The notes: generated by a model not told the origin, from the sequence alone. Counted from the whole stretch's first letter, positions 39,491 to 49,239 are shown. The stretch is 61,256 nt of DNA, filler included, from Dugesia japonica (GCA_001938525.1; 5 parts of 5 records of this genome joined end to end with filler, not necessarily neighbours in it); one strand, 5' to 3'. Made by a program: numbers and translations.

Positions 39491-41032
39491 NNNNNNNNNN
39501 NNNNNNNNNNNNNNNNNNNNNNNNNNNNNNNNNNATCATTTTTTTACTAAGTCGTGGAACCACATCACTTAGATTTCTCAATTCAATAAGACGTGGGATT
39601 GTACCAAAAAATATTTACAAGTTATTGTTTCATCGTAACGGAGTTATTGATATATCATTTGGATATTGCAATTTGTTCTCGCAAACTTAGGCGCCAAGTT
39701 GTAAAATTTCAGTAAGCATAAGATTAATAAACGGAAAGAAACAAATCCGTAGTGGTGGTAGAATAAACCAGTGATTTACCGATTAAGTTCTCCTCAAAAC
39801 ATCAAGCTCCCGTTGCAGCAGCTCTTTTATTCGACAATTTTATCCTACTCAATTATTTGTGAACATTTTGAAGTAATTATTTTAATTTAATTATGGATTA
39901 TATTCAATAACCAGAATAATAAATTTGTAAAAATAAATGTTAATGAATTTAAATCATTAATTTCTTAAAAAATGCAAAACTTATTAAATAATTTTTTATT
40001 AATTGACTTTTAACCAAAAACGACTATAATTTATTATGCCGATAAAGTTTTCGAGTTTAAGTTATAATGATATTAAATAGGCAACCAATAAGGCAAAAGC
40101 CAAAATCCTGCATTATAATATTAATCTCGTTACTCGGCACAATGTTTGCTTTTACAAATATTAGTGACCACTCTACTGAATAAGATCAGAGTCTATATAT
40201 TTTTTTGTGCGGTTCATAAAACTATTTAAATAATATATATATAAACACACTTATGATAAAAGCATATAAAGCGAATGAAGAAAAAACAATATTTTATTGA
40301 AATAGAACACATAACACCTCTATAAATTCTATAATCTAACATAAAAAAANNNNNNNNNNNNNNNNNNNNNNNNNNNNNNNNNNNNNNNNNNNNNNNNNNN
40401 NNNNNNNNNNNNNNNNNNNNNNNNNNNNNNNNNNNCATAAAAGGTGACAAATAATAAACCCATACCTGAATGCGATAAAGTGTTTGTAAATCCAAATGCA
40501 TAATCACTAAGAATCTATCATTAAATTCCACTAATTCGGCCTATGTTGAGATACAAGAAAATGATTTTAGTGAATAGCCCATAATGCATGTGAGGATAGT
40601 TGTAACACACCAACTCCCAATCAGACGTAAATTCATGCTCATGACNNNNNNNNNNNNNNNNNNNNNNNNNNNNNNNNNNNNNNNNNNNNNNNNNAAAAAT
40701 TGATATCTTATGATAAGCAGAATAAACTAATTATTAAACTGGAAATGTTGTAAATAAATAAAATAATTACAAAATAAGTGATTAAAATCCCTAGTACGAC
40801 TATCGGACATTAATATTAAAAGTGGAAGACTCGTTATATAAATATTCTGGTAACGGTAATAATAATAAAATTGATAATAAAGATTAACACTAGGAGCCGT
40901 GATGATACTGAATCATGATATGATCAATGTCAATATTAATAATCTAATAAAATAATGGTCCGACCTTAGCATCCATGGACTTTTTCTTTTCTAAATAATC
41001 ATGTAATTTGCAGCTCTAATTTTGTTTCAGCA

Positions 41033-41257
41033 ATGACCACCCGCCTACAAAATATGTTACGGTGGATTAGGAAACAACGACAATCTGCCAGGAATAAACA
41101 ATTAATCGCATATTTTTTGACTGATGGAGCTGTGCAGCATCCCGACGAAACGGATCTCCAATGTTTCGTCAAAATGTTCCCGATGGAACTTCAGGTGGAT
41201 ATAGACGAGGAGTAACCCTGCTTCCCAATCGAACTTCGGTTACATGAATCGGTGTAA
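41033..41257 (+). pseudogene. Small ORF with a degenerate LxCxE-like motif (candidate adintovirus 'oncoid')
   Basis: Acceptor tttgtttcag at 41021-41030, ATG 41033, QHPDETDLQCFVKMFP..DIDEE. The TAA at 41213 is followed in frame by PCFPIELRL, which repeats FPMELQV. Confidence 0.55.
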
Positions 41258-41392
41258 CAATACAGAAACATTAAACTATATTTGATTTAGTTAATCTAAA
41301 ATAAAACTGCATGATTATTATGTGTTTTCTCCCTTTTATTTGTTGCTTATGATCCTTTCTAATTCCCTTAGTATTTTCCAGAATTTGGCACC

Positions 41393-41737
41393 ATGGATTT
41401 TAAATGGGAGATCTTGCGCGAGCGCTATACTGACCGAATAATATTCAAGCGGTATCGTAATCCATACGACCGTAATGCGGCTGCTACCATAGACTTCTCA
41501 ACTTTATCGCCTGAAGAGGCGAACCAGGAACGAGAGTGGGCGGCCCTCACGCGTCAGGTCTAGTATGATTGGAGCGGCCCCGATCGGAAGCGCGAGGTGA
41601 TGCATCGCGTCACGTCGGTTGACCCCATAACCAATCACGTGACCACCCACTGGAGAGATGGACCCTCACTTTTTCCAGTCCCTTTTGGACACCTGCCGCA
41701 AAGCGATAGTTTCGTTCTTGATATGAGTGATACTTGA
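41393..41737 (+). pseudogene. Orphan ORF, paralog 1 (114 codons, one in-frame TAG at 41561)
   Basis: Acceptor ttttccag ending 41381, gcaccATGg context; MDFKWEIL...FKRYRNPYDRNA. Not in the supplied ORF track. Confidence 0.65.
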
Positions 41738-41926
41738 AAGACTTGTATATTAGTCTCACGACGAAGTGTAACTAAATGGTGTTTAGGCCATCGAATAAAT
41801 TAATCATGTTATTTTATTTTTGGAGCGCTCTTAATTGTTTTCTATACTCATCAATTTTTGTTCATCCTAATAAAATCGTCTTGGTTAAACATAAATTTAT
41901 CGATTCGCTTTTGTAGATTTCCAATA

Positions 41927-42343
41927 ATGGAATACATTTGGAATGTGACCACCAATATCCAGACTGGGCTATCCACCTTCCAAAAATACCGGAATCCTCA
42001 TAACCGAAATGCAGGGGTGCTGGTATACAACTCCAACATAGCCCCCGAGCTAGCCACTGAATATCGCAGCTGNNNNNNNNNNNNNNNNNNNNNNNNNNNN
42101 NNNNNNNNNNNNNNNNNNNNNNNNNNNNNNNNNNNNNNNNNNNNNNNNNNNNNNNNNNNNNNNNNNNNNNNNNNNNNNNNNNNNNNNNNNNNNNNNNNNN
42201 NNNNNNNNNNNNNNNNNNNNNNNNNNNNNNNCCAATTACCCTCCTACGAGCACCTGTCATCCTTTGTGCAAAATAATTTATGGAGCGTGCGTAACTCCCT
42301 GGGTAACGCCAGTGACGAAAACGCTTCCAGAAGAGGCTCGTGA
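41927..42343 (+). CDS. Orphan ORF, paralog 2 (middle hidden by N-run)
   Basis: Acceptor cttttgtag ending 41916, ATG 41927; 16 of the first 47 residues are identical to paralog 1 without gaps. Confidence 0.65.
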   Translation: MEYIWNVTTNIQTGLSTFQKYRNPHNRNAGVLVYNSNIAPELATEYRSXXXXXXXXXXXXXXXXXXXXXXXXXXXXXXXXXXXXXXXXXXXXXXXXXXXXXXQLPSYEHLSSFVQNNLWSVRNSLGNASDENASRRGS

Positions 42344-42496
42344 CCTTTATTTTTTTGTAATTGTATTTAATTTAATATTTCAGGTTTACTCGTTGTCTTA
42401 TTTCCTCATGGGAACTTAAATAGGTTGAATAAGAGCTTTGCTGTTTTATTATATAATCATCATAATAACAAACCTTAATCATACTATCTCTTTTAG

Positions 42497-42860
42497 TGCA
42501 CTCTTCGCTAAATCGTACGCCTGCCCCAACAAAGAAAATACGCGAGGACAGTGAGGACATAGAGATGTTCTGGAGCCTTTATCGATTGGCCAAGCGTCGT
42601 TGGGAAGCCGACTTGGCTACAGCAAATGCCAAAGTGAAGCGCTATAAAAATAAATGCACCAGCGTTAGAGAGGAATTAAGACTGGCGCAGGAACAAGAAA
42701 GAGCATGGAAAGCTCAAGTTGAATCCTTCGCCGAAATGATCCAGTCCAGCCATGACCGAGAAAATAAACTGGTTAATTTCTCTTGTTAAAGGAAAAGTCA
42801 TACCTTGAGCCCCTTATGATCGATAAGGGTACCCAAACAAAAAACGTTTCTCGCCCATGA
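42497..42860 (+). pseudogene. Coiled-coil orphan ORF with a frameshifted tail containing DKGTQT
   Basis: Acceptor tctcttttag ending 42496; heptad-like region; the -1 frame from about 42777 reads FLLLKEKSYLEPLMIDKGTQTKNVSRP*. Confidence 0.5.
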
Positions 42861-42995
42861 TCCTGAAGTTATGTAAAGATAAATATCACTTTTGGTTATC
42901 CAGTCACTTGTGAATTTAAATTTTTTTTTTATGATGGTAGAATGTTGAACACTTTACTGTATTTTGCCATCTACTTAATGATTTATCTATTTCAG

Positions 42996-43306
42996 TGGCT
43001 AGAATCCAATTTCCCAATAGTTTAAGACGTTGTCATCGCCTCTTACGTCATCTCTTCGTCGAACGACATCTGAAAAGAAAAACAGATAAGGCTTTGTTGA
43101 AACATCTCGATCAAAGAGATCGATTAATAAAAAAATTAGATCTAGTGATAAAAAAGCAANNNNNNNNNNNNNNNNNNNNNNNNNNNNNNNNNNNNNNNNN
43201 NNNNCTTTTACTACAGCGAAAGGTGGACTTCCTGAAACAATACATCGCTGATCTGTCACGCCAACTAGGAAATCCTAATATGTCCCAATGGGATGAAGAT
43301 GACGAC
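42996..43306 (+). CDS. Basic/coiled-coil orphan ORF with acidic tail
   Basis: Acceptor tctatttcag ending 42995; leucine-periodic segment, then WDEDD before an N-run. Confidence 0.5.
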
Positions 43307-43499
43307 NNNNNNNNNNNNNNNNNNNNNNNNNNNNNNNNNNNNNNNNNNNNNNNNNNNNNNNNNNNNNNNNNNNNNNNNNNNNNNNNNNNNNNNNNNNNNN
43401 NNNNNNNNNNNNNNNNNNNNNNNNNNNNNNNNNNNNNNNNNNNNNNNNNNNNNNNNNNNNNNNNNNNNNNNNNNNNNNNNNNNNNNNNNNNNNNNNNNN

Positions 43500-43607
43500 T
43501 AAACTGAAAACCTGCCACAGGGACGGTAGGGTCAAATTCTTGAAAGGGTTCCCCTGAGGACTGTTTTTCCCCCAGTCGCTTTTTCTAACTCAGGTAGAAC
43601 CCCAACA
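43500..43607 (+). repeat. 3' end of a putative LTR (…gtagaaccccaaca)
   Basis: The same terminal 14-mer occurs at about 50844-50857 and 50982-50995; the complementary start tgttggggt is at 49240. Confidence 0.5.
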
Positions 43608-43639
43608 GTATTCCAATTCGATAAATCCACTTTTAAAAT

Positions 43640-43850
43640 GTGATGACATTTATATAGATACTTTTGTATTACCACATCATTATTAAAGGAGCCTCAAATT
43701 TTTATATTTTCTTTTTCATTGATAAAATCCTCCATAGCAATATCTTCATTCATTTTGTCTAAGAATTTAAAATCAGGCTATTGTTTCTTTTCATTATTCA
43801 ACTTCAATTTTTCAATCAATTTTTCTTCATTATTTAAACTTGATGGTTTT
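43640..43850 (-). pseudogene. Possible packaging ATPase mid-fragment (decayed Walker B region)
   Basis: ...DFINEKENIKI*GSFNNDVV resembles hhhFDD; support is mainly contextual. Confidence 0.3.
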
Positions 43851-44405
43851 TTTCTTGCTTTATTACCAGTATGCACAAAGTATTTCTTCAAAGCACCTCT
43901 CAATATACGATTGAATCTCTCTACGTGTACTGCCTTATATTGAGAGAATACAAAATAATTTTTAAATGTTTTATAAGATTTTTGAATTTGCTGTTGTAGA
44001 AGTCTTTACCATATCGGTTTGTCAATTATTTGGATGTCCATCTTTGAACATTTACTTTATTGCTGGCCTCATATTATTAACAGAACTTGATTTTATCGGT
44101 ACTTCTCTTGCAAATCTACTAAATGCATCGATACATTTCAAATTATACTTGAATCCTATATTAATCTCTGAATATGGGATCATTTCCAACAAATACATTT
44201 GCCATAAATCATCAATACCATATTTTTTATACGCTGTTGTTGGAGATTTTATCAATATTAGTTTGTTTAGACTGTATGCTAGTTGACTCGATAACCACGT
44301 TTTTGTCTTTGTTCTTGTTTTTTGTGCTGCTTACATCAACGTTTATACGCTATGAAAACCTGCGGGGATTTTTGGATCCGTCCATATTGTCTGTAGTTTG
44401 ACCAT
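43850..44405 (-). pseudogene. Polinton retroviral-like (rve) integrase, N-terminal and core parts
   Basis: IWTDPKIPAGF...TWLSSQLAYSLNK...YGIDDLWQMYL...GFKYNLKCIDAFSRFA...QTD...KAVHVERFNRIL. Confidence 0.9.
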
Positions 44406-44469
44406 TACAACAATAGGATAAAAATTTCAAATCAAAATTTGGTAAAGATTGTATACCACACATTTTATA

Positions 44470-44710
44470 TATAAAATGAGTTAAGCTCAATACTACCAAT
44501 ACAATTGGAAGTAATGTTGCTATAAAATCTCACTCTTATTTATTCATAACTTCTCTCCATAATCTCCTATTTTTTGTATTTACCAGCGATAATAAAGACG
44601 TTTTATGTCTTTTCAATCTTTCGTTTTGAGCTTTGCTAATGGTTATATTACCATTAACAGTATTTATAATAATTTCAACTTTTAGTTTTGTAAATAAATT
44701 TCATTCATTA
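44470..44710 (-). pseudogene. Small basic Polinton virion core-type protein
   Basis: EIIINTVNGNITISKAQNERLKRHKTSLLSL...DFIATLLPIVL resembles the E...N...GN.......L..HK...QxGGF..LL family found between ATPase and integrase. Confidence 0.55.
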
Positions 44711-44749
44711 TTTTATTTATTTCTTTACTTAAATAATCGATCCTGTTTT

Positions 44750-44980
44750 TGATAATTGGGTTTGAGATAACTCGTATTTCACTCCGCTATACTTCTCTAC
44801 TTTTTTATCTCGTTCTAACCCAACAAAGCCATTAGGTCAAAATCTAGTTAAAATTGAGCAAAACTCTTCCAAACATTTCAATTCAAACTGTTTTTAAATT
44901 AGAATAGGCTCAAAGATCAAATTAATAACAACAATAAAATGAAATTACCCGATTTACCAACTAATAATGCTTTTATTATC
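44750..44980 (-). pseudogene. Polinton packaging ATPase remnant (internally deleted)
   Basis: KALLVGKSG Walker A start and a C-terminal EEFC....PNGFV segment. Confidence 0.55.
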
Positions 44981-45780
44981 ATAAAGTCTAAACCTTTGCT
45001 CGAAAGGTTAACACTAGTAAATTTAACAATATTTTAGTCACTAATGATAATAATAACACATACAAAACTTATCGTTATAGATGATTTTCTGCTAAAATAC
45101 TTAAAGTGAATAATAATGACACTGTCTATCTAACTTGCAAACTACTGACAATAGTAATTTCAACATTCTTACAGAAAGGTTCATTTACAGTGCACATATG
45201 AAAATGGCTTTGTCTATTGGATCAGAGGCATTGATAAATCAATTCGTTTCGAAGAGACGAATATTCTGTAAAATCTTTTGTACAAACACTTAAGATGCTA
45301 GTATGATCTGATGAGATTATACGCGATGTGACAAGCCACGGCATTATTCTGGCAGCTTTCTATCTGGTAAAATTATTAATTAATAATTATTTTCTTATAT
45401 CCCACTTTTAAAGAAATTTTTTAAGTTTTCCACATTTTTTTCTAATTGCTGTCTATTTTGTCCTTGTACCGGATACCGTCTTTAGTGAATTTTCTCCATT
45501 ATTCAACAAGAATCTTCAAATCTGTTTTGGCTTTTATTTCTTGCTTCTACCTTGATGATTACAAAATCGTCCACTTTAAATTCTCTTTTAGTAGTCACTT
45601 GTGAAATTATTTCCTTATTTTTCTCCGGAACATCTGACTTGTACCACTTTTCTCTGTTAATTTTCTTTCTAAAAAAATTTCAGTCAGCCTCTTTCCAGTT
45701 AAGTATTCTTGTTTTAATCTTACTTTCTTTGGTATCTTCATGTAACATTTGACACTCTACACATACTTCACATTTTGAAC
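44980..45780 (-). mobile_element. 3' end of a second Gypsy element (integrase tail, PPT, LTR)
   Basis: KREFKVDDFVIIKVEARNKSQNRF...IMEKIH..Y...EKNVENLK is homologous to 27830-27960. Purine tract aaaagtggga at 45400-45409 (minus strand), then LTR-like sequence. Confidence 0.7.
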
Positions 45781-46899
45781 TAAAGTTTCCCGCCCAAAAA
45801 AATATTTAAAATTCCCACTAAATTTACTGATTAATTAAAACAAAAACTGAGTCACAGTTAAAAAATTTGAAATTCCCAGTATATATACTTAATTAAAACA
45901 AATATACTGTAGATAGGCCAGCATGCTTTCACTTTTTTATGGGTTAATTGATCTCCTTCGTCTCTTCTTTCCTTTTCTTTCTCCTAGCTCTCTAAACAAA
46001 CAAGCACAAAAAAAATCAATATTAAAACACATAAAAAATCTGTCAAGGTCGAAAATCAATAAATTCAAATACCAATAAATTCAAATATCAATAAAATCAA
46101 AAATCAATCTAATTAATCTATCTACCTATTTTACAAAAATCTATTATTTCTTAGAAACAAATAAAAATTTTANAAAATATCTGTTAATTATAAACAAATT
46201 TTAACAAACATGACCAAATTGTATATAAATGGGTTTATTTCATGATCATACAACAAATTTCATGTTATATACCTGCGACTTACTTGTTTTATACACAAAA
46301 ATTTATAAAGTATACCGACTCTTACAAAATATGTACAACATTAATGAGTTTACAATAATTCTATTTGGATAGATACAAATTTCAATAATTTACGTATAAA
46401 TTTCATCAGAATATATGCATAGTTCATACAATTATACACAAATCCTAAAAGATTTAATAAAACATTAGCACTTTATACTTAATGATTACATTATGTTATA
46501 TACAAATCTACATAAATATAACTTTAGCTTTTTATTTTGCTTGCATTTGTATTGTATTCATATTGTATGAATAAGTAGTCATGTATGTATTACACACTGA
46601 CAGAAGAGGTGGAAAAATAGGCACACGTTTACAGAAGAGATAGAAAAAATACAATCAAATATAACCAAATTTCATTATAAGGTATACAAAAACGTGATTT
46701 CACAAGAAGTATATCAATGGACAATGCATAAAATTTCTTAAATAAGTTGGATTAATGATTTACACATCCAAGTTTTATATAAAATAATTATATAATACAT
46801 TTAGAGCACAGTAATTTTATATATTTACTTAAAAACTCTTTAAAAATATATTAAGGCCATAGACTTTTCATTAAAATATACAACAATTTCAATACATAA

Positions 46900-47430
46900 A
46901 TTTGAATATGAACTGATTTCATAAAGTCTTATAAAAATTAATTATTTACTTAGAAACATATAACAATGTCATGAAAATATCTAGAAATTTCATTGCCTAA
47001 GACATCTATATAGTTTTATATGGGCAATTAATTAAGTTTAATTCATGGAATCATCATGACTGCATACTAGAAATCAATACCGATACAGTTTCATACTGAA
47101 AAACAATATAGTTTCATCGTGTAAATAAATAGTTTTATACTGAAAAACATCAAGGTACCATTCAGGAAATCAGGGCAATTTCAAACAGAAAGTAATGCAG
47201 TTTCATAGAAGAAACCAATATTGTTTCACACATGAAACCATTATAGATTTTATCCCATCATATGATTTCATAACGTTTTATACAAATCTACTAATTTATT
47301 AGAAACATAACAATTTCATGAAAATATCAGTAAATGGTATTGTCTAAGACAGCTTCATTGTTTCATATTAGCAATCGATATAGTTTCAAACTTTATCATA
47401 TAGTAAATCAATATAGTTTTAAATAAAGTT
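46900..47430. repeat. Degenerate ~22-bp minisatellite (atatagtttcatactgaaaaac) with an internal duplication
   Basis: Recurring agtttcat cores; 46950-47030 is similar to 47300-47380. Confidence 0.55.
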
Positions 47431-47965
47431 AAATAAAGAAAAGTTAAAGTTTAAATAATATAATTTTGATTTACTTATATAGTTTTCATTAATCAGTATT
47501 GTTTGGGATCCTGTGGATTTAATAATTACAAGTAATCATTTATGAGTTTATCATTTTCAGCAATATGTCGCACAATAATGAGAGTTTATCTGTAACTAGC
47601 AATAAACATAAAATAATTACTTTAATTGTTAAATGAGTTTGCAACAGACATTTTTAAATTCAAGAGGCCAACATTTTCTATTTCAAAATGAGGCAAAGAA
47701 AAAAAACAATTAACATCAATTTGTTATTTTATCGAATTAGAAACTTTGTATAATACTTGAAACTTTTATTATTAGAAATTTATTAAAATTTATTGATTTA
47801 TTGTTAATAAATAACGCCGTTTAAAATATAATTTATTGTTCTATATTTCGACGGATCATGGGATTGTTCAGTTTGTTTTATTTAAACATAAAAATTCAAA
47901 AAAATATTTAAAATGTTTAATATTTATGGAAAATTTTAAAAAACCTATGAAAAAATAAAAATGCC

Positions 47966-48177
47966 AGTAGATAGATATTGGCGCAATGTACTACCCCTCC
48001 CACGTCAAGGTCAAAATTTTCAAGGTCACTAGTACAGTATATTCGATATTGATTGGTCAATGGTATAAAATACTCGATTCTGATTGGTTGAAATTTTCAA
48101 GGTCATATTAGTTCAAGGTTGGCGGTAAATAGTATATTCGATTCTGATTAGTTGAAATTTTCAAGGTCAGTTTTACA
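47966..48177 (+). mobile_element. Putative Polinton-like terminal region with TCAAGGTCA/GATTGG repeats
   Basis: Begins AGTAGA; TCAAGGTCA at 48005, 48020, 48097 and 48161; repeated tcgattctgattggttgaaattttcaaggtca units. Confidence 0.45.
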
Positions 48178-49239
48178 NNNNNNNNNNNNNNNNNNNNNNN
48201 NNNNNNNNNNNNNNNNNNNNNNNNNNNNNNNNNNNNNNNNNNNNNNNNNNNNNNNNNNGCAGACTAAGTATTTTTTTGTTTTAATGTTAAAATTTTTTGG
48301 TTTAAATTAATTGATTTTTATGATTTGTTTAAAGTTACTAATTTTAAAGATTTTTATATAAATTAAGTGATTTAATTATTTTATGGATTTTTCAAAGAAA
48401 ATCGATGGAAAAACATTTGTTTTTAAATTTTCAAATTTGAAGTGAATTTTCGCCGAGTAATATTAACATCAATATAAATCGCTCTGGGCAATATTAAGAT
48501 TAGAGGCTTTTCATACAATGTTAAAAATAATATATAAAAAACAAATGAAAAGACTTATCAAAACATAAAATTTATTGTTGATAAAACATAAATGATCACA
48601 GTCATTACGTACAGTTGTTTAAATCTAGATCTTAATTATCAATTAGATTTTAATAGTACAAATTAATTAGTTTAAATAACAAAATAAATTACCAGTAAAT
48701 GTGCTTCTTTNNNNNNNNNNNNNNNNNNNNNNNNNNNNNNNNNNNNNNAGTTCAATTAAAATCAATAAATTAAGTAAAAATTATGAAGTTAAAATTTGAT
48801 AATATTAATTTGATAAAGTTTAAATCATTACATTAAAAATTGAAATTAAATTATAATCAAATTAAAATAAAATCATTAACTTATAATTATTAAACAAAGT
48901 CATTAACCTAAGATTTAATCTTAATAAATCTAACCTCTTTCATGAATTTCTTTTGTCAAATTGTCATAAAATTCCTTTGACACATCATTTATTTTTTCAG
49001 TCTAAAAAATTAATCAATAACAATAAATTAATTAATTAAACTTACCACGTTAAAACTTCTCATCATATTTATTGAAAAAGTTTTCATTGAATTCATTTTG
49101 TTTTTATCTAAAAAAATCATTAAAATAAATTAACAAATAAATATTCACTTATTTTATAATAAATTTTCAAGGTCATCTACTATTTTATTTATTTAACTCA
49201 GTTAAAGAAAAAATATATATAATAATTTCCATATAATAA

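What the first reader, a model, noticed from the sequence alone, without database searches (positions are those of the whole stretch)
40835..43306. Five orphan ORFs, each directly behind a 3' splice acceptor: a candidate adenovirus-style spliced early region of a Polinton
Seen: five short, GC/CpG-richer plus-strand ORFs in a row. Each is preceded by a pyrimidine tract ending in YAG (AG ends at 41030, 41381, 41916, 42496, 42995), four with a CTAAT/TTAAT branch-like motif 10-25 nt upstream. There is a TATATAAA at 40835 and AATAAA after ORFs 1 and 2 (41300, 41794). The cassette lies on the same contig as, and converges on, a Polinton ATPase/core/integrase module. Known: adenovirus early regions express several small host-modulating proteins by splicing one leader to alternative acceptors, and many invertebrates resolve operons by SL trans-splicing. 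Inference: this is a host-manipulation cassette of an endogenous adintovirus expressed by a shared leader or trans-splicing. I do not recall this architecture being described for Polintons, but cannot check that here.
Basis: partly seen in the sequence, partly recalled or inferred. Interest (0 to 1): 0.8.

Follow-up and report, generated by a model that had tools for sequence, protein, structure and literature searches.

The report
Orphan gene cluster beside dead Polinton
A 2.3-kb run of small, apparently real but database-orphan genes, each starting just after a splice-acceptor-like site, sits next to a broken fragment of a virus-like Polinton, but nothing found here shows that the genes belong to that element.

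Summary
In this AT-rich piece the TATA and AATAAA motifs are too common to count. The acceptors matter only for ORF1-3, whose first ATG lies 2, 11 and 10 nt behind one (3 of 3, against 2 of 33 other ATG-ORFs).

ORF2 and ORF3 are diverged tandem paralogues. They are conserved at codon positions 1 and 2 and random at position 3, so they are or were coding. ORF5 has no ATG and can be joined in frame to ORF4, so four genes are more likely than five. ORF3 and ORF5 cross assembly gaps, and ORF2 carries one in-frame stop.

The neighbouring Polinton module is a dead fragment: a pX-like remnant plus the N-terminal half of a chromo-integrase, with several stops and a frameshift. The piece holds no polymerase, capsid or protease, and only a trace of ATPase.

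Two related elements carry a conserved same-strand gene block where the cassette lies here. None of the three related contigs holds a cassette homologue. No cassette ORF had a relative in the searches run (ORF5 was not searched in a database).

Best reading: a lineage-restricted, operon-like small-gene cluster whose 5' ends are made by splicing, possibly by chance beside a Polinton relic. Viral origin is not excluded.

The parts
40835..40842 (+). TATA-like motif (TATATAAA), 195 nt upstream of the first acceptor
   Evidence: TATAWAW occurs 36 times on this strand of the piece, so it is not significant alone.
41021..41030 (+). Acceptor-like site 1 (pyrimidine tract + CAG), 2 nt before the ORF1 ATG
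41033..41215 (+). ORF1, 60 aa, orphan; 43% GC
   Evidence: Pfam and PDB sequence searches blank. No exact record. No metagenome relative.
41300..41305 (+). AATAAA, 85 nt after the ORF1 stop and 81 nt before acceptor 2
41372..41381 (+). Acceptor-like site 2 (CAG), 11 nt before the ORF2 ATG, which sits in a CACCATGG context
41393..41737 (+). ORF2, paralogue of ORF3; 114 codon positions with one in-frame stop; 50-53% GC throughout
   Evidence: Codon-position identity to ORF3 is 26/30/14 of 48.
41794..41799 (+). AATAAA after ORF2, 122 nt before acceptor 3
41907..41916 (+). Acceptor-like site 3 (TAG), 10 nt before the ORF3 ATG
41927..42343 (+). ORF3, paralogue of ORF2; crosses the assembly gap 42073-42231, and the frame across the gap is unverified
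   Evidence: No homologue found.
42487..42496 (+). Acceptor-like site 4 (TAG). The first ATG downstream (42565) is in the ORF4 frame.
42497..42789 (+). ORF4, a coiled-coil-like orphan. A phase-1 donor-like GT lies 2 nt before its stop.
42986..42995 (+). Acceptor-like site 5 (CAG), phase 1. Probably an internal intron acceptor that joins ORF4 to ORF5.
42996..43306 (+). ORF5: no ATG, basic and coiled-coil-like. It crosses the gap 43160-43204 and runs into the gap 43307-43499. Probably exon 2 of the ORF4 gene.
43500..43858 (.). Unassigned stretch between the cassette and the integrase remnant. No integrase C-terminal half is detectable here.
43859..44399 (-). Remnant of a stand-alone rve integrase of the chromo-integrase type. 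Only about the first 200 of about 360 residues remain, with at least 4 in-frame stops and at least 1 frameshift.
44485..44679 (-). Remnant of a small basic adenovirus-pX-like 'core' protein. Only about the last 65 residues remain, with 2 in-frame stops.
44721..44777 (-). Possible trace of the packaging-ATPase C-terminus, at the expected place and strand. Not significant (E about 1).

Best explanation
Window 41033-43306 (+) holds a tight cluster of four small, lineage-restricted protein-coding units:
- ORF1;
- ORF2;
- ORF3, an old tandem duplicate of ORF2;
- a two-exon coiled-coil gene made of 'ORF4' plus 'ORF5'.

GC-rich coding blocks alternate with AT-rich spacers of 150-220 nt. In two of the spacers a poly(A) signal is followed by a 3' splice acceptor a few nucleotides before the next start codon.

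The most likely mode of expression is operon-like. One primary transcript, or closely packed transcripts, would be cut at each poly(A) site. Each downstream cistron would then receive its 5' end by splicing at the acceptor. That would be spliced-leader trans-splicing if the unidentified host does it, and otherwise alternative splicing from one upstream leader exon.

The minus-strand neighbour (43859-44777) is a dead, truncated fragment of a Polinton/adintovirus-type element. I take its adjacency as not shown to be functional.

Shown: the motifs and their excess before ATGs, the paralogy with coding constraint, the composition pattern, the orphan status in the searches run, and the identity and decay of the neighbour.

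Inferred: splicing itself, the polycistronic transcript, the ORF4-ORF5 join, and cellular rather than viral ownership.
For: - Acceptors lie 2, 11 and 10 nt before the first ATG of ORF1-3, against 2 of 33 control ORFs.
- The first ATG after acceptor 4 is in the ORF4 frame. ORF5 has no ATG, and a phase-1 donor-like GT just before the ORF4 stop matches the phase-1 acceptor at 42995.
- ORF2 and ORF3 N-terminal parts: 33% identity, E = 1e-11. Identity by codon position is 26/30/14 of 48, and the annotated frame scores 87 against 37 or less for the other five frames.
- ORFs are 43-53% GC (ORF5's first part 35%) and spacers 25-32%, with the changes at the ORF ends.
- AATAAA lies 81 and 122 nt before the next acceptor. 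With a poly(A) site 16-24 nt after the signal, the intercistronic distances are about 60-105 nt. That is inside the 50-200 nt typical of C. elegans operons (PMC7668243).
- Stop-to-ATG distances are 177, 189 and 221 nt.
- CpG observed/expected is about 1 in the flanks, so the genome is probably not CpG-methylated.
- The neighbour is broken while the cassette ORFs fill their GC-rich blocks. This suggests different histories.
- Related elements lack the cassette and have other genes at that position.
Against: - The host is unknown, so trans-splicing competence is unknown.
- No SL RNA or any other Rfam family was found in the piece.
- The nematode Ur motif TAYYTT is not about 50 nt upstream of any acceptor.
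- GC3 of 0.47-0.58 in six of the eight ORF parts, in a roughly 25% GC setting, is odd for resident cellular genes. It would fit a foreign or viral origin.
- The only recognisable neighbour in 12 kb is a virus-like relic about 550 nt away.
- No homologue exists to show the genes are cellular.
- ORF2 carries an in-frame stop.
- Two ORFs cross gaps.
- There are no transcript data.
Confidence: 0.5

Rival explanations
1. The cassette is an accessory or 'early' region that came in with the Polinton/adintovirus-type element. It would be expressed from a TATA promoter through one leader spliced to alternative acceptors, or by trans-splicing. It may have been kept by selection after the rest of the provirus decayed.
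For: - It lies about 550 nt from, and converges on, the only recognisable gene remnants in the piece, and these are virus-like.
- The ORFs are orphans with GC3 of about 0.5, unlike their surroundings.
- One related element, L003, also has a block of small unknown genes on the opposite strand.
- Adintoviruses are known to carry variable accessory genes (PMC8502044).
- The acceptors before the ATGs are real motifs.
Against: - The element here is a short fragment with several stops and a frameshift. It has no polymerase, capsid, protease or terminal repeats in the piece.
- In the two relatives L002 and L003 the integrase is followed on the same strand by a conserved four-gene block, which is missing here.
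- There is no cassette homologue in L001-L003 or, for the ORFs searched, in the large searches.
- The ORFs have no LXCXE, CR1 or CXXC motifs.
- The long AT-rich spacers are unlike the tight packing of the relatives.
- The TATA and AATAAA motifs are at background frequency.
Confidence: 0.2
2. The ORFs are ordinary cis-spliced exons of one or two larger genes, or separate genes that each have their own promoter and a short 5'-UTR intron. There would be no polycistronic or shared-leader mechanism.
For: - ORF4 and ORF5 can be joined in frame.
- The alternating GC pattern looks like exons and introns.
- Donor-like GT sites lie close to the ends of several ORFs (sequence).
Against: - ORF1, ORF2 and ORF3 each start with the first ATG within 11 nt of the acceptor and each end at a stop where GC falls. 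That is not expected of internal exons.
- The acceptor phases do not allow ORF1 to ORF2 to ORF3 to be joined through the named acceptors in the ORFs' own frames.
- A spacer of 177-189 nt leaves little room for a poly(A) site, a promoter, a first exon and an intron.
Confidence: 0.15
3. Nothing functional. The ORFs are chance open frames, or decaying remains, in a GC-richer patch, and the acceptor-like sites are background T-rich sequence.
For: - GC-rich DNA gives long open frames on both strands here.
- ORF2 has a stop.
- There is no homologue and no confident fold (pLDDT 63.6).
- Acceptor-like sites are frequent, at 0.003 per nt.
Against: - The codon-position pattern between ORF2 and ORF3 shows past purifying selection in the annotated frame.
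- The probability of each stop-free stretch being open by chance is 0.002-0.006, and each GC-rich block is filled by one plus-strand frame.
- The excess of acceptors before ATGs has p of about 0.001.
Confidence: 0.07

Closest known systems
SL2-type operons of nematodes (C. elegans; Allen et al. 2011 as cited in PMC7668243), and spliced-leader operons of other invertebrates
   Same: Same-strand small genes. A poly(A) signal lies before the next gene, with an estimated 60-105 nt from poly(A) site to acceptor. The acceptor lies within about 11 nt of the start codon.
   Different: Host unknown. No SL RNA gene was seen. The Ur motif is not at about 50 nt. The ORFs are much more GC-rich than the surroundings. 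There are no transcript data.
Adenovirus early regions, where one leader is spliced to alternative acceptors (from general knowledge; no adenovirus sequence was fetched or compared)
   Same: Several small ORFs in a row on one strand, each behind an acceptor-like site, with poly(A) signals inside the unit and a TATA-like motif upstream.
   Different: No leader exon or donor could be established. The spacers are long and AT-rich. No similarity to any viral protein came back from Pfam or the PDB sequence search. The adjoining virus-like element is dead and truncated.
Adintovirus accessory genes ('Oncoid', 'Adintoc'; Starrett et al. 2021, PMC8502044)
   Same: Small, poorly conserved ORFs in an element with adenovirus-like virion genes and a retrovirus-like integrase.
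   Different: Oncoids are defined by LXCXE, CK2, CR1 and paired CXXC motifs and usually lie upstream of PolB. Here only scattered CK2-like sites occur, with no LXCXE, CR1 or CXXC. There is no PolB, and the cassette abuts the integrase. The text of that paper does not mention splicing.
Polinton/Maverick elements with a chromo-integrase (for the neighbour only)
   Same: The integrase remnant's full-length relatives have an rve core plus a C-terminal chromodomain. On related contigs they lie beside a P-loop ATPase, a pX-like protein and an adenain-type protease, and the pX-like/integrase order is kept here.
   Different: In the window only about 0.9 kb survives, with stops and a frameshift. No polymerase, capsid, protease or terminal inverted repeats were found.

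Membership tests
Polinton/Maverick (adintovirus-type) element: the neighbour at 43859-44777 (-) | Retrovirus-like (rve) integrase | tested here: met
   Relatives P0001-P0003 share 50-59% identity and two of them carry PF00665. tblastn gives E = 2e-45. The profile search found 1292 relatives at E <= 1e-10. The copy here is broken, with at least 4 stops and at least 1 frameshift.
Polinton/Maverick (adintovirus-type) element: the neighbour at 43859-44777 (-) | [quoted passage not shown] | tested here: not met
   Pfam scans of 48 stop-free stretches on both strands of the piece gave no polymerase hit. The piece is only 12 kb and full of gaps, so the gene could lie outside it.
Polinton/Maverick (adintovirus-type) element: the neighbour at 43859-44777 (-) | Virion module: packaging ATPase, adenain-type protease, capsid proteins | tested here: not met
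   ATPase only as a trace at E about 1. No match to the protease or to the three unknown genes that follow the integrase in L002 and L003. A pX-like remnant is present (E = 4e-12).
Polinton/Maverick (adintovirus-type) element: the neighbour at 43859-44777 (-) | Terminal inverted repeats bounding the element | tested here: not met
   Only short, AT-rich inverted repeats of 23-37 nt at 70-88% complementarity, as expected by chance in such sequence.
Cassette as part of that Polinton lineage | Homologues of the cassette ORFs in related elements | tested here: not met
   tblastn of all eight ORF parts against L001, L002 and L003 gave nothing below E = 0.2. Only three partial relatives (1.8-7.6 kb) were examined.
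Cassette as part of that Polinton lineage | Position colinear with related elements | tested here: not met
   In L002 and L003 the integrase is followed on the same strand by genes of about 380, 110-170 and 410-460 aa and then an adenain-type protease. Here the integrase match stops at about residue 200, and the cassette follows on the other strand.
Adintovirus 'Oncoid' accessory genes (PMC8502044) | LXCXE with a CK2 site, a CR1-like motif, paired CXXC | tested here: not met
   A regular-expression scan of all ORF parts found no LXCXE, CR1 or CXXC, only scattered (S/T)XX(D/E) sites.
Adenovirus-style spliced early unit | One promoter and a leader exon with a donor used by several acceptors | tested here: inconclusive
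   A TATA-like motif is at 40835, and GT dinucleotides lie between it and 41030, but both are at background frequency. No splice predictor or RNA data were available.
Adenovirus-style spliced early unit | Spliced transcripts ending at the acceptors | not testable with these tools
   No transcript data, and the source genome is not in the collections. Exact look-ups of three ORF products were not on record.
Spliced-leader operon (nematode SL2 type) | Same-strand genes with a short distance from poly(A) site to trans-splice acceptor (mostly 50-200 nt) | tested here: met
   AATAAA lies 81 and 122 nt before acceptors 2 and 3. The range is taken from PMC7668243. There is no canonical AATAAA between ORF3 and acceptor 4.
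Spliced-leader operon (nematode SL2 type) | U-rich (Ur) element TAYYTT about 50 nt upstream of the acceptor | tested here: not met
   The motif lies at 9 nt; at 101 and 106 nt; nowhere; and at 35 nt upstream of acceptors 2 to 5.
Spliced-leader operon (nematode SL2 type) | The host carries SL RNA genes and trans-splices | not testable with these tools
   Host not identified. Rfam found no SL RNA in the 12-kb piece, which says nothing about the rest of the genome.

The most novel reading that the evidence does not exclude
The cassette is a genuine accessory region of a Polinton/adintovirus lineage. It would consist of small rapidly evolving genes, including a duplicated pair, each expressed by splicing a leader onto an acceptor just before its ATG. 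It would have outlived its provirus because the host kept it. That would be the first sequence-level lead to a spliced, adenovirus-like or trans-spliced expression programme in Polintons, and a case of domestication of their accessory genes.
Probability: 0.15. Interest if true: 0.7.

Novelty: new member of a known kind. Interest (0 to 1): 0.3.

Why it matters
If the cluster is cellular, it is one more lineage-specific, operon-like set of small genes. It is useful mainly as an annotation note, and as a warning that lying next to a Polinton relic does not make something Polinton cargo.

If the viral reading proved right, it would bear on an open question. How Polintons and adintoviruses express their genes in animal cells is essentially undescribed, and whether they splice as adenoviruses do is unknown. 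The adintovirus paper consulted does not mention splicing. The locus gives five exact acceptor positions at which existing RNA data from the source species could settle this.

Tried and rejected
- Pfam on all cassette ORF parts and on 40 other stop-free stretches of both strands found nothing relevant.
- PDB sequence search with ORF1, ORF4, the ORF2/ORF3 alignment and the integrase profile found nothing.
- The 5.8-billion-protein search found no homologue for ORF4 or for the N-terminal part of ORF3.
- Exact look-ups of ORF1, the N-terminal part of ORF2 and ORF4 from its ATG were not on record, so the source genome and its other copies could not be reached.
- Pattern scans of JGI metagenome contigs with the ORF2/ORF3 alignment and with ORF1 gave no relatives.
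- Rfam at E <= 1, and a tRNA scan, found nothing.
- AlphaFold of the ORF2/ORF3 N-terminal parts gave pLDDT 63.6. That is too poor for a fold search, so none was run.
- The C-terminal parts of ORF2 and ORF3 do not align, so paralogy cannot fix the frame across the 42073-42231 gap.
- The regions upstream of ORF2 and ORF3 do not align, so the two acceptors are analogous in position but not shown to be homologous.
- A short YRN..RNA match between ORF3 and the pX-like protein of L002 (E = 1.6) was rejected as chance, because L001's homologue lacks it.
- ORF1-to-ORF2 and ORF2-to-ORF3 exon joins through the named acceptors are out of phase.
- The joined ORF4+ORF5 model was not searched. Only ORF4 was searched on its own.
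Full report
**Scope.** I worked only on the piece 39535-51598. It is about 27% GC and has 12 runs of N.

**1. The observation**

The five plus-strand ORFs exist. AG dinucleotides end at 41030, 41381, 41916, 42496 and 42995. Each follows a YAG with at least 7 of 9 upstream pyrimidines. Four of the five have a YTRAY motif 15-23 nt upstream. TATATAAA is at 40835 and AATAAA at 41300 and 41794.

The ORF blocks are 43-53% GC (the first part of ORF5 35%). The spacers between them are 25-32% and the flanks 25-28%.

Background frequencies matter in such AT-rich DNA:
- the same loose acceptor definition hits 33 plus-strand and 30 minus-strand sites;
- AATAAA occurs 51 times on the plus strand;
- TATAWAW occurs 36 times on the plus strand.

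So the TATA and poly(A) motifs carry no weight alone.

What does exceed chance is the position of the acceptors. The first ATG of ORF1, ORF2 and ORF3 lies 2, 11 and 10 nt behind one. Only 2 of 33 other ATG-initiated ORFs of at least 30 aa in the piece have such a site within 16 nt. The hypergeometric probability is about 0.001.

**2. The gaps**

After the 43160-43204 gap only one frame is open, and it is the one nominally in phase with ORF5. After the 42073-42231 gap two frames are open. The C-terminal parts of ORF2 and ORF3 do not align, so paralogy cannot choose between them. Continuity across both gaps is therefore unproven. ORF5 also runs into a third gap (43307-43499), so its end is unknown.

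**3. What the ORFs are**

ORF2 and ORF3 are paralogues: 33% identity over 48 residues without a gap, E = 1e-11, with a shared YRNP..RNA motif. In the codon alignment, identity is 26, 30 and 14 of 48 at positions 1, 2 and 3. The annotated frame scores 87, against 37 or less for the other five frames. That is the signature of an old duplication under protein-level constraint, so at least this pair is or was coding.

ORF2 carries one in-frame stop. Beyond it the same frame stays open and equally GC-rich.

The first ATG after the acceptor at 42496 is in the ORF4 frame, at residue 24. ORF5 has no ATG. A donor-like GT two bases before the ORF4 stop is in phase 1, as is the acceptor at 42995, so the two could be joined in frame. 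I therefore read the cassette as four units, not five. No tool predicted that intron, so I neither joined the exons nor searched the joined model.

ORF4 gives only weak coiled-coil-type Pfam matches.

No part of the cassette, on either strand, has a Pfam family or a relative among PDB sequences. AlphaFold on the two-sequence alignment gave pLDDT 63.6, which is too low for a fold search.

**4. Relatives elsewhere**

- ORF4 and the N-terminal part of ORF3 found nothing among 5.8 billion proteins.
- Exact look-ups of three ORF products were not on record.
- Pattern scans of JGI metagenome contigs with the ORF2/ORF3 alignment and with ORF1 found no relative.
- ORF5 and the C-terminal part of ORF2 were not searched in the large databases.

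**5. The neighbour**

On the minus strand, 43859-44399 matches stand-alone integrases (tblastn E = 2e-45). A profile search of 1.84 billion representatives found 1292 relatives at E <= 1e-10. Full-length ones are about 350-380 aa with an rve core and, in most of those scanned, a C-terminal chromodomain.

Three contigs encoding relatives were read:
- **L001** (1.8 kb) has, in order, the C-terminal end of an ATPase, a small basic protein and the integrase.
- **L002** (6.6 kb) has a P-loop ATPase, an Adeno_PX-like protein, the integrase, three unknown genes and an adenain-type protease (Peptidase_C5, 22.3 bits against a cut-off of 21.3). All are on one strand. L001's first two products match L002's ATPase (69% identity) and pX-like protein (E = 3e-14).
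- **L003** (7.6 kb) repeats the order integrase, about 380 aa, about 170 aa, about 460 aa, protease. It then has convergent genes that include the ATPase.

The integrase family therefore belongs to Polinton/adintovirus-type elements.

In the window, only about the first 200 of about 360 integrase residues are detectable, with at least 4 in-frame stops and at least 1 frameshift. The pX-like gene is reduced to its last 65 or so residues, with 2 stops. The ATPase is a trace at E about 1. No polymerase, capsid, protease or convincing terminal repeat was found. It is a dead fragment of roughly 0.9 kb.

**6. Does the cassette belong to it?**

Against:
- The gene block that follows the integrase in both longer relatives is absent, and the cassette occupies that side in the opposite orientation.
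- No cassette ORF matches L001-L003.
- The motifs that define adintovirus 'Oncoid' genes in PMC8502044 are absent.
- The 150-220 nt AT-rich spacers contrast with the tight packing of L002 and L003.
- The cassette ORFs fill their GC-rich blocks almost unbroken, while the relic has about one break per 30 codons. This points to different ages or different selection.

For:
- It lies within about 550 nt of the only recognisable remnants in 12 kb.
- It is an orphan in every search run.
- GC3 of 0.47-0.58 in most of its parts is unusual in a 25% GC setting.
- L003 shows that such elements can carry convergent small unknown genes.

I put the viral reading at about 0.2.

**7. Mechanism**

ORF1-3 each have an acceptor, a very short leader, the first ATG, an ORF and a stop where GC falls. 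For ORF1 and ORF2, AATAAA follows 57-85 nt after the stop, and the next acceptor lies 81 or 122 nt beyond it. With a poly(A) site 16-24 nt after the signal, the distance from poly(A) site to acceptor is about 60-105 nt. That is within the 50-200 nt typical of C. elegans operons (PMC7668243).

This is what spliced-leader operons look like, and I take that as the most likely mechanism. The alternative is a shared cis leader.

Caveats:
- the host is unknown;
- no SL RNA gene is in the piece;
- the Ur motif quoted in that paper is not at about 50 nt;
- there are no transcript data.

CpG observed/expected of about 1 in the flanks suggests a genome without CpG methylation. This is only a weak hint about the host.

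**8. Novelty**

Accessory genes in adintoviruses are known (PMC8502044). Its text does not mention splicing, and my literature searches found no description of a spliced Polinton early unit. The present locus does not establish one.

As it stands this is a lineage-specific, operon-like small-gene cluster beside a Polinton relic. Interest: 0.3.

(a) In my private reasoning I recalled from memory a nematode spliced-leader string and rough motif strings for Polinton integrase and ATPase.

(b) An early script, a composition script and notebook entry 1 print the bounds of stop-free stretches, including the two parts of ORF2 and pieces of the integrase remnant. That amounts to giving the places of breaks. 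I noticed this later.

(c) L001-L003 were fetched by look-up of relatives of the window's integrase before their nature was known. Once they proved adintovirus-like, I fetched no longer contig and did not scan the viral-contig collection (see referred steps).

Noticed in passing
window 41540-41650: The GC-richest part of the cassette (about 50% GC, inside ORF2) holds three closely spaced CpG-containing ACGT/CGCG-core motifs of the type TCACG(C/T)G. They could be a regulatory site or simply coding sequence.
   Followed up: no
window 46914-47040 and 47263-47386: A direct repeat with a period of about 347-349 nt, 76-81% identical, with shorter 23-nt tandem units inside (47083-47244). It looks like a local satellite or duplicated non-coding segment.
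   Followed up: partly
window 48036-48169: A 41-nt unit repeated at 64-nt spacing (90% identity), plus a third, shorter 22-nt partial copy at 48036. It borders the gap at 48178.
   Followed up: no
window 51266-51374: A 30-nt tandem repeat, 3.6 copies, 75% matches.
   Followed up: no
window 39535-51598 (flanks): CpG observed/expected is about 1.0 in the AT-rich flanks. There is no CpG depletion, so the source genome is probably not CpG-methylated.
   Followed up: partly
L001:1266-1778: In this metagenome contig the called integrase product ends at 144 aa (relatives are about 360). An unrelated open frame of at least 171 aa with no Pfam family overlaps and follows it. This is a second copy of this integrase family cut short in mid-gene.
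   Followed up: partly
L002:4660-4989 versus window 43784-43999 (-): The 109-aa product downstream of the L002 integrase gives a weak tblastn match (E = 9e-5, 31% identity) to the same window stretch that matches the integrase core end. This may be lysine/glutamate-rich low complexity.
   Followed up: no
L003:5430-7566: This related element has the ATPase and three unknown genes (320, 129 and 112 aa) on the strand opposite the integrase/protease block. In L002 the ATPase is upstream on the same strand. Gene order in this group is therefore rearranged between members.
   Followed up: partly
window 50246-50455 (+): An isolated 70-codon stop-free stretch in a slightly GC-richer patch (about 32%), with no Pfam match.
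   Followed up: partly
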